A DNA stretch of 63,220 nucleotides, filler included, from Reticulomyxa filosa (Eukaryota; Protista; Foraminifera): NCBI GenBank assembly GCA_000512085.1. It is 15 parts of 15 records of this genome, joined end to end, with 100 filler letters (N's around TTAATTAATTAA, not from the genome) between each part and the next. Parts side by side here need not be neighbours in the genome. Positions count along the whole stretch, not along the records: positions 24,180 to 29,268 come from ASPP01027643.1; 14 more parts are not named here. One strand, 5' to 3'. A program made the translations under genes and the position numbers. Below, one piece after another: positions 23,701 through 29,202 of this stretch (positions are counted from its first letter, which is position 1; every line of letters starts with the position of its first letter). The notes under the pieces are model-generated. The model saw only the letters and a list, made by a program, of their open reading frames with translations. It was not told the origin of the DNA and did not search any database.

Positions 23701-24627
23701 ATAAAATAATATTTTTTTTATAAATAATAATTTGGTGATCTAGTTTCGTTTTTTGTTTATTTTATCAAATCGAAATTATATTTAAAAATTTAAAGAATGT
23801 GTTATAAAAAGATATACATATTTGAGGTATGTATATTTTTGATGGTATAGATATATTCAAAGTCTCTTCTTTAGTCATTTCCAATCATCTTCTGTCTTGC
23901 TTTGGTCTCATAAACACTCCAGGGCTTGTGTTCTTCAAAACGTTATAAGACTAAGTGAACAAAGACTATATTTTTCCTAAACTTTCAAAAAAACCTATTC
24001 TCAGCACCAATACAAAAAAAAAAAAGAAAAATTAAGTTTCCAAAAAACAACTCAAAAAGTAGATCAAGAATGACGTCTTNNNNNNNNNNNNNNNNNNNNN
24101 NNNNNNNNNNNNNNNNNNNNNNNTTAATTAATTAANNNNNNNNNNNNNNNNNNNNNNNNNNNNNNNNNNNNNNNNNNNNTGATTGCGTTTGTATAACCTT
24201 TTGGAGAGTTTTTGCACAATACTAAAACAATTACTCCAATTTTTTATCCTTTGTTTCATTTGAGATTATTTTAGTTTTTTATAATTCAAAACTGTTGTTT
24301 GAGTATTTTCTGTTGCATAAATCTTATTTATCATAATAATGCCATTGTATACACAATCAATGTACAAAATTTTAAATAAAATGTTAAATATTGAATTTCA
24401 GTTGTGGTTTGTATAGTGATACTTGAAAATAGAAAAAAGAATATAAGAAAATGAACGAAATGCGTACACCATTTCACTGATTGTAAGAACTGCGTTTGAA
24501 CAATAATCAAATTTTAAATGGAAAAATAGAGATGCTAGAAAAATATGATCAATTAGTAAGTGAACATTATTTCATTTAATTCACTCAAAACAACAAAACC
24601 ATTGAAGAAATTTTTATTGGAATGAGA

Positions 24628-26017
24628 CTATCCCCAAATATGAATTGGACCATTTTTTGAACTATAACATAAATTAATACCACAGCAATTATTGCTATTT
24701 CTGTCTTTTTCTAATTGTATAAATGTAAGACATAATATTCCACAATCTTTTTTCTTATCTCCATGAACCACATGCAATTCATATTTATTTGATCGAATAT
24801 CCCAAAAACGAATTGTATTGTCATATGATGCAGAACATATTACATTTGAAATACCACCAATTTCATTATTGTCTACTACAAATGGTGAATATTCAACAGC
24901 ATACACGTAACTTGTATGTCCATTGAACATTTGAATTTCTTTCCCAGAGCGAATATCCCACAAACAAACACTTTGATCTCTTGATCCAGATAATATTGTA
25001 TTTGCACCACCATTAATTCCTAATTCATTTGATCCATATTTTACACTTCTAACGCAATCAGTATGTCCTCTGAATAAGATCAATTGTTTTGTTGTTTCAA
25101 TATCCCATATACGAATGGTTCTATCATCTGACCCAGAACAAATAGTATAACCATTACCACCAATCAAACCAATAGCATTGCTTTTATTGCTATTATTGTG
25201 ACTTTGCAATGGTGAAAATTCTACACACCAAACCGCATACTCATGTCTATTAAGAACAGATAATGATTTGAATGTTTCGACATCCCACAAGCGAATAGTT
25301 TTATCAACTGAACCAGAACACAAATATTGGCCACCACTAAATGGTGAAAAGTTAATACCATAAACACCATTTGTATGTTCATTAAACATTTTTAATTGTC
25401 GATTACCTTTTATATCCCAAAAGCGAATTGTTTTGTCATATGCTGAAGAACAAATGACATTGCAACGACGATTATGATAATGGTATGGTGAAAATTTCAC
25501 ACAATACACAGGATCTGAATGCCCTTGGAATAATTTAATTTGTCTGCCGCTCTCTACATCCCAGATACGAACTGTTTTATCTTCTGATCCCGAACAAAGT
25601 AATTTATCACAACCAAATGCTGAATAATCGATACTCCACACATAATCATTATGTCCAGAGAAAGTTTTGGTCAATTTAGATGACGAACAAAATATATCAA
25701 GGAGGAAGATGTCAGTTGCCTATATTAAATCGTGATTGTGAATGATAACAACTAACACTTGATTGAGATTGAATGAAAATAAATATATAAAAAACATAAC
25801 ATAAGCCACAACAAGTTCGTCAAAATCAGGAATCCATCCCAATTTAATCTTTAGTATTCGGATCCAATGCCGAACAATTATTTGGGTTTCTTCTTCTTCT
25901 GACTGAATCAATCATATATAATAAATACAATAAAAAAAAAACAACTTTCTGAGAGCTTGAAATGAAGCTTACTAATTCTAGGTGAGTTGAAGTGTGTTTC
26001 TCATTAACAAGACTCAT
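24628..26017 (-). CDS. WD40-repeat protein (3 exons)
   Basis: About seven GH...SGSxDxTIRxWD repeats. Exons 26017-25973, 25902-25801 and 25719-24628 join in frame through GT-AG introns. Confidence 0.92.
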
Positions 26018-26510
26018 CTCTCAGCTTCTTTTGTCTTGAGATTGTCTTCGATAATGTACGATGAAAAAATAATTGAATTTTATATCAAAATCAATAAAGG
26101 GGTTGCATTTTATTGTTCTGTGTACTTGTTTACGAATATTTTTATTAAAAGAAGTTAGTGATATTGTTTCTTTTTGTTTAAAAAAATCCATGTAGTGCAA
26201 AGCACTACTGGTCATTGATAAGATCCAAGGAACTTAGAACTCCTTTATCAAAAACTCTCCCCAAGTAATTTATTGTTACGTAAAATCGCGTTTTTAAAAG
26301 TAATATTGCCAATTACAGCAACGCCACCGTATACACTATCAACTAGTTTTTCACTTAAACAAATACACTATATAAATGCTTTTAACAATAAAATTATATT
26401 GTTCCTAAAGAAACTGAAAACGCCACGAAATTTTTTATGTTTTTCAAAGGGGCCTTTTTTCCACATCTTCCCCTTTTTTCAAAAAAATTTAATCTTTACT
26501 CAATCTCAAC

Positions 26511-29202
26511 ATGGGTAATGAGAACGCGCCACAAAAAACCCTTGAAAGATCAGCTCCCTTTCAAAGCTTGGCGGATTTGCCCACTCCATTTTCTCAATCT
26601 CAATGTGTGCTACACAAACACGAACTCCTCATTTGTGGGGGTATTGATAGAAAAGGTTGTTATTCTTATCATATACTCAAAGACGAATACAAATTTATTT
26701 GTGAGTATCCAATCAATGTTGAGGTACAGGGACACTGTGTAGTCAAACTGGTAGAAAACAGCAAAGACAGCAATCAAACCACTTTGTTGTCTTTTGGTGG
26801 AAATACATATACAAAAAGACATACATTGATGATGAGATATGTAAGTGTTTGGAGTAATATATCAAAAAAATTAAACAAATCAAATGAATTCAACATTTAC
26901 AATGGATGGATTCCTTTCACAGATAATCGCAATAATCCAATTATCATTGGAAGAGATAATGATAATTATCTTGGATTGCGTGCAGTGATTGGTGGAAGTA
27001 ATAATCATTTGTTATTTATAACATATCCTTATAATAATATTAGTGTGTTTGATTTAAATACATTTCAATTTATTAAACACGATCGTTTACCAATTAATAA
27101 TTATGTGGAATATCATTGCTTTGTATCAAAGTCAGAAAATGGACAAGGACAGGAAATAATGAAAACAAATAAAAAAAAAGTAAGAGTAAAAAGAAAAAAA
27201 GGATGAAATGCTATTGTTTTATAGAAATGACGGATTATCAATTGAATATGATGAAAATAACAACTCTTTTCGATTTCATCGATTACTTGTTTGTGATGAC
27301 ATTGAGCCATTTGCATATTATGCATATGTGCGTATCAATGATATCATCTTGTTCTTTGGTGGATGGGATTGTGGATTAGATGATGAAAGTGTTATTTCAA
27401 AATCTGTGTACAAATATTCAATCAGAGAAAACAAATGGATGACATTTCAAAACATTTTACCCAGTTCATTGTTTCATCGTTTTGCAATATTGAGTGAAGA
27501 CAGCGCGTATGTGCATATTCTTGGAGGGTGGAATGGGAAGCAACAGGTCCCAACACATTCCAAAACGAAAGTGAGTGAATGGCTGAATGAAGCAGAAATG
27601 AAAAAAAGTGAGCCAATTGAAAATGGAAACAATGAAGGAGAGGAATCAGATGAAGAAGAGGGAAATGATAATGAAGATAAAAATAAGAATGGAGTGGACA
27701 ACATAGTAAAACAAGAGGAGAGTGAGAAACAAAATCAAGTGAAAAAAGATTCTGATGTTAAGTTTTACTTTTTTTGTTGGTTGTTATTATTTAAGGACTA
27801 CTACTTTGCTGCTATGCAAATGAAATTGATATTTTTCTTTAATTTTTTAAAAAACAAAAGCAATTACGAAAACACAATATATATTTAAATTATACAACTT
27901 TATTTTAAATAGAATATCATGGAAAAAGCAGAACAATATAAAAAATGGAAAAAATGGTTTATTCAAAGAGAACAAAAAGATAAATTAGAAATGATTGAGC
28001 ATTTTAAAACAATGTCAAATGAACAATTTCAAGTATGGCTATTGAATGAATGCAAATGGAAAAATGAAATTACAAAAGATGATATCAACTCTATTTGTGT
28101 TTTAATTGATGCTTATCTTGACTTTACTGCCGAAGATAAGAAAGGAGAGGAGGTTAACCAATTGTATTTTTTTACCCTTACTTTTTATGGAATAGCAATC
28201 ACAAATATAAAATAGCTAACAGCATACATAATAGTAAATGAAAGAAAAAACTTGATAAATATGGAAGAGTTGACATTCAAAGAACTTCTTCGCCAAAGTT
28301 ATTATTGTTTGGAAGCAACAGATTTCGAAAAGATAAATGAAAAAAATTTAAAACCACAATTACTTAATATAAAGAATGATATCATCGAAAAAGACGAAGA
28401 CGTTGAAAAAGAATTCAAAAATAATAAACCTACATTTAAAATTACTTGGATTTCATTTCAACATCCAGTAATACTTGGGAAAACAAAAATAATAAAAAAC
28501 GCATTGGTAATAATGATTGCAATCAGTGAATATATTGATAATACAATATGGAGCAATCTTCCAAATGTGAAGAGAAAAGATTTTGAGAATTTTAAACAAT
28601 TATTTGAACAAGAATTGAATTATGAAATGATTTGCAATTCATCTTCAAATATGACAAAGGATGATGTTCGAGATTTTATGGACGGAATAATTCTCAATTT
28701 CCAACTTCGTAAAAACACTAATAAATATGACGGTTTGATATTAGTTATTTGTGGACATGGAGAGAACGGAAACATGTTGGTAACAAGCGATGGAAAACAT
28801 GTATCTATTGATGAAATGCGTACATCATTTAATTGTGACAAAATGGAGTCTTTTAAAGATTTACCTAAAATTTTTATTATTGATGCTTGTCGTGGTGAAA
28901 ATATTCCAAAGTCTCATGAAATTGTAATGCGAGGAAACAAAGCATTATATGGACATAATGACGATGGATTTTTGATTATTTGGTCAACTACAAAAGGACA
29001 CCGAGTAGCTGATTTGTCATTATTGAGTGAATGTATGAAAAAAGTTGTCGTGTCAAAATATAAAAGTGGTTATCCATTCAAGCAAATGTTGCAAGATATT
29101 AGGACAGAAATTCGAAATAATAAAAGTAGCGAATGGTATTGTGTGGAAAGTCAAGACACAACTGATTATGATATCATTTTTGAATCAAAAAAATCTGTGT
29201 AA
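26511..29202 (+). CDS. Kelch-repeat / caspase-like (peptidase C14, p20-type) fusion protein
   Basis: Kelch propeller, acidic linker, small helical domain, then a caspase fold with ICGHGENG and KIFIIDACRG. Phase-0 GT-AG introns 27757-27912 and 28153-28215 join the ORFs in frame. One frame break at about 27180-27201. Confidence 0.85.

What the first reader, a model, noticed from the sequence alone, without database searches (positions are those of the whole stretch)
24628..29202. Head-to-head WD40 gene and Kelch-caspase fusion: candidate protist sensor/protease system
Seen: four ORFs join into one protein made of an MGN N-terminus (possible myristoylation), a Kelch propeller, an acidic linker, small adaptor-like domains and a caspase-fold protease with an intact His-Gly/DACRG dyad. 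Its ATG is about 490 bp from the ATG of a divergently transcribed WD40 gene on the same contig. Known: beta-propeller sensors coupled to caspases (Apaf-1, fungal HET-E-type NLRs) and divergent sensor/helper pairs (plant NLR pairs) act in non-self recognition. Caspase-like genes in Reticulomyxa have been noted before; I do not know of the pairing being described. Inference: an NTPase-free innate-immunity or cell-death module in which variable propellers sense ligands and activate the fused protease.
Basis: partly seen in the sequence, partly recalled or inferred. Interest (0 to 1): 0.8.

Follow-up and report, generated by a model that had tools for sequence, protein, structure and literature searches.

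The report
Variable sensor-protease family in a foraminiferan
A giant freshwater amoeba carries a large family of proteins that join a fast-evolving binding surface to a caspase-shaped protease, which looks like an immune receptor built without the usual switch parts; the neighbouring WD40 gene is probably not a dedicated partner.

Summary
The piece is a Reticulomyxa filosa contig (public models RFI_31452 and RFI_31453). The Kelch-caspase fusion is real as a family: at least 15 annotated paralogs share it, and two of its three joins are conserved introns. The third (27180-27201) is a frame break in an A-run, so this copy may be mis-assembled or dead; no reads were available.

New here: (1) the linker is a five-helix domain plus a PB1-like ubiquitin fold; (2) the protease has a caspase fold, but the Asp-binding residues are replaced by acids and a conserved R/K-G sits in the cleavable loop, predicting Arg/Lys specificity; (3) Kelch and WD40 propellers show positive selection on their binding face, the protease none; (4) public models also join the module to TPR, Ras, Hsp70, ARM and TRAF domains.

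The head-to-head pair is not supported as a unit. WD40 genes (family of at least 352) cluster near caspase genes but lie downstream as often as upstream (5/11 vs 4/9), partners vary, and 493 bp is ordinary spacing.

Verdict: a new variant of the sensor-adaptor-protease theme. Immune function is inferred, not shown.

The parts
24628..25719 (-). WD40 gene, last exon: seven-repeat propeller (363 codons plus stop)
   Evidence: Pfam WD40 E 3.7e-48; 352 relatives at E<=1e-90, all 120 listed from R. filosa; selected sites on the binding face
25720..25800 (-). WD40 intron 2 (81 nt, GT-AG)
   Evidence: same position in six paralogs
25801..25902 (-). WD40 exon 2: conserved 33-residue helical box of unknown family
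   Evidence: found in 64 proteins; invariant R, W, Y; no Pfam or PDB match
25903..25972 (-). WD40 intron 1 (70 nt, GT-AG)
   Evidence: sequence; similar short first exon and intron in paralogs
25973..26017 (-). WD40 exon 1 with inferred start ATG at 26017 (the public model starts further upstream)
26018..26510 (.). 493-bp divergent intergenic region; no homology to the other divergent intergenic regions except 29 nt next to the Kelch start
   Evidence: genome median intergenic distance 426 bp (PMC13746701)
26511..27179 (+). Fusion gene: MGN start and first part of the Kelch propeller
   Evidence: positive selection p=7e-6 after gap masking
27180..27201 (+). Frame break in A-runs: assembly error, real frameshift, or a non-conserved 22-nt intron (unresolved)
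27202..27594 (+). Second part of the Kelch propeller
   Evidence: Pfam Kelch_1 E 8.8e-5; same ORF as the first part in six paralogous copies
27595..27756 (+). Acidic low-complexity linker
   Evidence: sequence; no blastp match in paralogs
27757..27912 (+). Conserved intron (156 nt)
   Evidence: used by the public model; same kind of donor and acceptor in paralogs
27913..28152 (+). Five-helix domain of unassigned fold; tandem in some paralogs
   Evidence: model pLDDT 94-97 over its core; no sequence match; not folded alone
28153..28215 (+). Conserved intron (63 nt); the public model splices it differently and loses the first strand of the next domain
28216..28479 (+). PB1-like ubiquitin-fold (beta-grasp) domain
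   Evidence: VIA Z 8.7-9.1, rmsd 2.0 over 72 residues to MEKK2/MEKK3 PB1; Atlas features point to ubiquitin-like, PB1 and CIDE-N families
28480..29202 (+). Caspase-fold protease: His 28756-8, Cys 28888-90; acidic S1 candidates Asp 28579-81, 28882-4, 29011-3; conserved linker Arg 28930-2

Best explanation
The plus-strand gene belongs to a Reticulomyxa-specific family of one-chain receptor proteases: a variable binding domain, a helical plus PB1-like adaptor, and a caspase-fold protease. Proposed mechanism: (1) the Kelch top face binds a foreign or damage-linked ligand [variation shown, ligand inferred]; (2) binding clusters the receptors through the PB1-like and helical domains, which stand where death-fold domains and the STAND ATPase act in animals and fungi [fold shown, polymerisation inferred]; (3) proximity dimerises the protease, which cuts its own loop at the conserved R/K-G site and then targets after Arg/Lys [residues shown, activity inferred]; (4) the output is a defence response or local cell death [inferred]. 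The WD40 gene belongs to a separate, much larger variable-receptor family that lies in the same gene-family-rich regions; it is a neighbour, not a fixed partner.
For: Architecture repeated in at least 15 annotated paralogs with conserved introns. M1a/M2a tests: Kelch p=7e-6 and 0.011, WD40 p=9e-8, protease and PB1 p=1 with gap-adjacent columns masked (unmasked). Mean dN/dS 0.17 protease, 0.24 PB1, 0.42-0.45 propellers. WD40 binding-face positions chosen beforehand have pN 0.43 vs 0.17 elsewhere, reached by 0/200 random sets; they match the selected codons of fungal HET-E repeats (PMC1805685). PB1 domains top both fold searches. Caspase fold Z 25.8 to caspase-8, 21.5 to MALT1. Asp at the alpha1, L4 and L5 sites in 41, 43 and 37 of 44 sequences, the three sites that are acidic in MALT1 and Arg/Gln/Arg in caspases (PMC4357240). 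R/K in 95% at one linker position whose neighbours are variable, and no conserved Asp there. Interchangeable N-terminal domains. Neighbour statistics.
Against: No transcript, protein or activity data. This copy has an unresolved frame break, and many paralogs carry breaks or remnants. The selection test is my own implementation on 6-8 sequences with fixed relative branch lengths; gene conversion could inflate it. PB1 Z-scores (8.7-9.1) are only about 1 above other ubiquitin folds, and the canonical strand-1 Lys is missing. The L5 Asp assignment rests on ungapped register; HMMER put a gap there. Non-Kelch fusions are unverified gene models. Among recent paralogs all 8 informative 5' neighbours are divergent and 5 are WD40, which leaves some room for pairing.
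Confidence: 0.5

Rival explanations
1. Capture-and-cut effector rather than signalling receptor: the variable propeller recruits a foreign protein and the attached protease destroys it directly, while the WD40 proteins with their N-terminal box or TRAF finger send other targets to ubiquitin ligases. No downstream cascade or cell death.
For: Same selection pattern expected. WD40 relatives carry a conserved box or a TRAF-type zinc finger. No death-fold or NTPase domain in the fusion.
Against: A conserved self-cleavage-like site and an oligomer-type adaptor fit regulated activation better. The box has no F-box or SOCS-box match.
Confidence: 0.25
2. One reading: the divergent WD40 and the Kelch-caspase are a co-regulated sensor/executor unit, as in plant paired NLRs.
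For: Divergent WD40 sequence 5' of the module in the window, L008, L009, L011 and (remnant) L001; far above genome-wide chance (P 1e-3 to 1e-5). Monophyly of three WD40 partners is not rejected (AU p=0.13).
Against: 3' WD40 neighbours are as common (5/11 vs 4/9). Against the local background P=0.07-0.16. Partners form a clade in 0 of 200 bootstrap trees; the paired caspases are rejected as a clade. The L008 partner is a distant subfamily (28-37% identity). No shared intergenic sequence. About 96% of close WD40 relatives have no detected caspase gene on their contig.
Confidence: 0.13
3. The expansion is largely neutral birth-and-death debris, and this copy is a pseudogene frameshifted at 27180-27201.
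For: Frame breaks in about half of the copies examined, some outside homopolymers, and one in-frame stop in L006; many remnants; the catalytic dyad is lost or truncated in 9 of 44 models.
Against: Purifying selection on the protease (dN/dS 0.17) and site-specific positive selection on the propellers argue against neutrality for the family. This copy has no in-frame stop, an intact dyad, and its only break lies in A9/A5/A7 runs where 4 of 8 copies break. I put the chance that this copy alone is dead at about 0.3.
Confidence: 0.07

Closest known systems
Initiator caspases (caspase-8, -9; MEROPS C14A) with Apaf-1
   Same: Six-stranded caspase fold (best Z 25.8 and 25.4), His-Gly and Cys dyad, disordered cleavable loop, N-terminal adaptor domains, link to a beta-propeller sensor.
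   Different: The S1 Arg/Gln/Arg set is absent, the loop site is R/K-G rather than Asp, the adaptor is helical plus PB1-like rather than CARD/DED (the helical domain's fold is unassigned), and the sensor is on the same chain with no NB-ARC ATPase.
MALT1 paracaspase (C14B)
   Same: Acidic residues at the alpha1, L4 and L5 S1 sites (PMC4357240); activation by clustering proposed.
   Different: No Ig domains; the chain ends right after the last strand; structure and sequence are closer to caspases; a conserved basic site lies in L4, which MALT1 does not need to cleave.
Fungal HNWD NLRs (HET-E, HET-D)
   Same: Large family with pseudogenes; positive selection at the same WD40 binding-face positions.
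   Different: No NACHT or HET domain in either gene; repeats within the WD40 gene are only about 60-77% alike in DNA, so no concerted evolution of near-identical repeats.
Plant paired NLRs (RRS1/RPS4, RGA4/RGA5, Pik-1/Pik-2; from my own knowledge)
   Same: Head-to-head arrangement; possible integrated domains (Ras, Hsp70) in other family members.
   Different: Neither gene is an NLR; the partner is not conserved across paralogs; spacing is ordinary for this genome.
Reticulomyxa caspase-like proteins of Klim et al. 2018 (PMC5982838)
   Same: Same protease family, which they place on the animal caspase branch.
   Different: The passages I read discuss phylogeny only. I found no paper on the domain architecture, S1 residues, selection or family size. 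The 2014 genome paper was not available.

Membership tests
Caspases (C14A) | Caspase fold, six-stranded sheet | tested here: met
   model pLDDT 86, Z 25.8 caspase-8 vs 15-18 metacaspases
Caspases (C14A) | His-Gly and Cys catalytic dyad | tested here: met
   intact here and in 35 of 44 aligned models
Caspases (C14A) | S1 Arg (L1), Gln (L4), Arg (L5) for P1 Asp | tested here: not met
   no Arg in L1; Gln replaced by Asp in 43/44; no conserved Arg in L5
Caspases (C14A) | Conserved Asp cleavage site in L4 | tested here: not met
   no linker column above 43% D/E; R/K 95% at Cys+14
Caspases (C14A) | Asp-specific activity | not testable with these tools
   needs an enzyme assay
Paracaspase (MALT1 type) | Acidic S1 triad on alpha1, L4, L5 | tested here: met
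   D34 41/44, D135 43/44, D178 37/44; the L5 position is by ungapped register only
Paracaspase (MALT1 type) | Flanking Ig domains | tested here: not met
   stop at 29200-29202 directly after the last strand; no Ig hit
Metacaspase | Extended sheet, closest fold among clan CD | tested here: not met
   Z 15-18 vs 22-26 for caspases
Metacaspase | Calcium-binding site and activation | not tested
   not examined
NLR/STAND receptor (Apaf-1, HET-E) | NB-ARC or NACHT NTPase | tested here: not met
   no NTPase hit in any exon of either gene
NLR/STAND receptor (Apaf-1, HET-E) | Sensor repeats under diversifying selection on the binding face | tested here: met
NLR/STAND receptor (HET-E type) | Near-identical internal repeats (concerted evolution) | tested here: not met
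   60-77% DNA identity between repeats
Paired sensor/helper genes | Head-to-head arrangement | tested here: met
   493 bp between starts; genome median gap 426 bp
Paired sensor/helper genes | Same partner kept across paralogs, co-duplication | tested here: not met
Paired sensor/helper genes | Co-expression and functional dependence | not testable with these tools
PB1 domain | Beta-grasp fold closest to PB1 structures | tested here: met
   top rows (Z 8.7-9.1, rmsd 2.0)
PB1 domain | Acidic OPCA motif and strand-1 Lys | tested here: inconclusive
   D-x-x-D/N and S-D-E-D present, no strand-1 Lys, basic residues at the start of strand 2; motif definition from my own knowledge; no Pfam PB1 hit
PB1 domain | Front-to-back oligomerisation | not testable with these tools
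   needs biochemistry

The most novel reading that the evidence does not exclude
Reticulomyxa has independently built an intracellular immune system of more than 100 receptor proteases, in which a PB1-like filament replaces both the death-fold adaptor and the STAND ATPase, an Arg/Lys-specific protease of the caspase lineage is the effector, swapped-in Ras, Hsp70 or TRAF domains act as decoys, and hundreds of co-clustered variable WD40 proteins act as interchangeable sensors.
Probability: 0.25. Interest if true: 0.85.

Novelty: new variant of a known kind. Interest (0 to 1): 0.58.

Why it matters
Intracellular immunity in free-living protists is almost unstudied. This gives a concrete, testable candidate in Rhizaria with receptor-like selection. 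It also bears on caspase origins: the Reticulomyxa proteins are cited as evidence that caspases are as old as eukaryotes (PMC5982838) and are used as an outgroup for animal caspases (PMC10959488). If they cut after Arg/Lys, the caspase scaffold and its cleavable loop can exist without Asp specificity, and these enzymes would show a state between paracaspases and caspases. PB1-driven activation of a caspase-fold protease is a mechanism I did not find described.

Tried and rejected
It did not call the stretch human-like, and the sequence matches R. filosa. I searched the spliced model exon by exon by reference and left out any search with a joined sequence of my own; the public model P0052 was used only by id. 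The Glockner 2014 genome paper is not held. WD40 box as F-box or SOCS box: no match. Shared intergenic sequence among divergent pairs: none above shuffles except 29 nt beside the Kelch start. Terminal or long repeats suggesting a mobile element: none. Relatives outside Reticulomyxa: the large profile search gave 86 hits; 17 of 19 new ones checked are R. filosa and the other two lack the module. Foraminifera are poorly sampled, so absence is weak. Myristoylation as a family feature: rejected as constant (6 of 9).
Full report
Source. The protease exon found 47 relatives annotated as Reticulomyxa filosa and one metagenome protein. Two database proteins lie on a contig of exactly 5089 bases and match this piece at 98-100%: RFI_31452 (WD40, P0070) and RFI_31453 (Kelch-caspase, P0052). 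The piece is therefore a contig of assembly GCA_000512085.1 (101.9 Mb, 39,965 genes, N50 3.6 kb, median intergenic distance 426 bp; PMC13746701). The spliced model was searched exon by exon; the joined search was left out.

Gene structure. WD40 gene, minus strand: exons 26017-25973, 25902-25801 and 25719-24628, about 412 residues; both introns recur in paralogs. Fusion gene, plus strand: 26511-27179, 27202-27756, 27913-28152 and 28216-29202, about 816 residues by arithmetic. The introns at 27757-27912 and 28153-28215 recur in paralogs, the latter with a matching donor and acceptor in nine of twelve copies shown. At least 15 public models carry both Kelch halves and the protease on one chain. 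The fusion is thus well supported as a family trait. The first join is different. Six paralogous Kelch copies run in frame across it without an intron, while the window, L003, L010 and L011 each break frame in an A-run there. An assembly error in a homopolymer is the simplest reading, but other copies have breaks outside runs and many remnants exist, so this copy may be dead (about 0.3).

Linker domains. A model of a paralog's linker (mean pLDDT 89) shows a five-helix domain and a beta-grasp domain. The beta-grasp domain matches PB1 domains best: MEKK2/MEKK3, NBR1, Par6, PKC-iota and p62, Z 8.0-9.1, with CIDE-N and ubiquitin just below; language-model features agree. PB1 and CIDE-N domains form front-to-back oligomers (own knowledge; p62 and NBR1 filament entries are among the hits). 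An acidic motif is present but the usual strand-1 Lys is not, so I call it PB1-like. The helical domain has no match, was not folded alone, and occurs in tandem in some paralogs.

Protease. The fold is nearest to caspases (Z 25.8 caspase-8, 25.4 caspase-9, 21.5 MALT1, 15-18 metacaspases), and the best sequence hits are caspases. Caspases bind P1 Asp with Arg, Gln and Arg on L1, L4 and L5; MALT1 has Asp, Asp and Glu at similar positions and cuts after Arg (PMC4357240). Here the L1 Arg is absent, the Gln is Asp in 43 of 44 sequences, alpha1 has Asp in 41, and the position five residues after the L5 Gly, where caspase-3 has its Arg, is Asp in 37. The alpha1 Asp is also present in caspase-3, so it does not discriminate by itself, and HMMER placed a gap in L5, so the third assignment is by register. 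Independently, the disordered L4 loop is variable except for a Pro and one R/K-G site, R/K in 95%, mostly 14-15 residues after the Cys, with no conserved Asp; caspases have a conserved cleavage Asp in this loop. Both lines predict Arg/Lys specificity with caspase-style maturation. This is inference from sequence.

Selection. Mean dN/dS among paralogs: protease 0.17, PB1-like 0.24, helical 0.40, Kelch 0.42-0.45, WD40 0.43. WD40 binding-face positions defined in advance have pN 0.43 against 0.17 elsewhere; 19 of the 30 most variable sites in 120 proteins fall in this set against 2.8 expected. They correspond to the selected codon pairs in Podospora HET-E repeats (PMC1805685). Site models give positive selection for WD40 (p=9e-8) and Kelch (p=7e-6 and 0.011) and none for the protease or PB1-like domain after masking columns near gaps (unmasked). 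The flagged Kelch sites lie just before or after blade strands, where Kelch ligands usually bind (inference; no Kelch model was made). Caveats: own implementation, 6-8 sequences, possible gene conversion.

Family. About 68 R. filosa models came from the word searches and about 70 more from the profile search, many of them fragments. Of 19 new hits checked, 17 are R. filosa and two are chance. Besides Kelch, public models join the module to TPR, Ras, Hsp70, a TRAF finger and ARM repeats; these joins are unverified in a fragmented assembly.

The pair. Twelve paralog loci were fetched and scanned with DNA profiles, with no hits in a reversed control. Excluding the window, the 5' neighbour is a divergent WD40 in 4 of 9 (one a remnant, one a distant subfamily), a divergent Kelch, NACHT or unknown gene in 3, and a tandem gene in 2. 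The 3' neighbour is WD40 sequence in 5 of 11 (Fisher p=1). Opposite-strand neighbours make up 24 of 34 adjacent pairs. Against this local background the 5' count is unremarkable (P=0.07-0.16); against the genome it is enriched (P 1e-3 or lower), and four contigs among the window WD40's closest relatives carry a caspase gene where 0.4-0.6 are expected. The partners do not group in WD40 trees (0 of 200 bootstraps, though AU p=0.13), the partnered caspases are rejected as a clade (AU p=2e-7), and intergenic regions are not homologous. With at least 352 WD40 genes, most have no caspase neighbour. The families share genomic neighbourhoods; a fixed head-to-head unit is not shown. Loci were chosen for contig length, and ancestral pairing with frequent partner exchange is not excluded (0.13).

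Comparison and verdict. It works like an initiator caspase fused to its own sensor, with MALT1-like specificity and HET-E-like diversification, but fails membership of each family on a defining feature. Caspase-like genes in Reticulomyxa are published (PMC5982838; PMC10959488). I found no paper on the architecture, specificity or selection, but could not read the genome paper. New variant of a known kind; interest 0.58. The value lies in the receptor-protease family rather than in the pairing, and function remains untested.

Noticed in passing
L002:108-5228: A NACHT NTPase gene (E 2.9e-8) lies head-to-head, about 500 bp away, with a Kelch-less helical/PB1/caspase gene: a possible split NLR.
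   Followed up: partly
P0053, P0194, P0213, P0066, P0056, P0210, P0248: Public models join the module, or part of it, to Ras, Hsp70, a TRAF finger, ARM or TPR domains; these could be integrated decoys or gene-model artefacts.
   Followed up: partly
window 25801-25902 (-): A 33-residue box with invariant R, W and Y heads the WD40 family; no Pfam or PDB match. Possibly a ubiquitin-ligase adaptor motif.
   Followed up: partly
window 24413-24485 (+): Short matches to Kelch-caspase genes (52 nt at 83% to L010; 23 nt at 87% to the window's own protease), tail-to-tail with the WD40 gene. Possibly a decayed copy; not called by the DNA profiles.
   Followed up: partly
L004:6981-9359; P0180: WD40 family members with an N-terminal TRAF-type zinc finger.
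   Followed up: no
L011:3265-15204; L009:7429-14030: Alternating arrays of WD40 genes, WD40 remnants and caspase genes or remnants, with tail-to-tail gaps of 50-90 bp.
   Followed up: partly
window 26460-26489: 29-nt stretch just before the Kelch start shared with L011 (score 42 vs shuffled maximum 35); possible promoter or 5' UTR element.
   Followed up: no
P0048 (ENA metagenome, 4.4-kb contig): The only relative not annotated as Reticulomyxa (29% identity) also has DACR and an R-G in the linker; source organism unknown.
   Followed up: partly
window 26511, 28153-28215, 26017: Public models RFI_31453 and RFI_31452 use other start codons and another splice at the last intron than paralog comparison supports.
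   Followed up: yes
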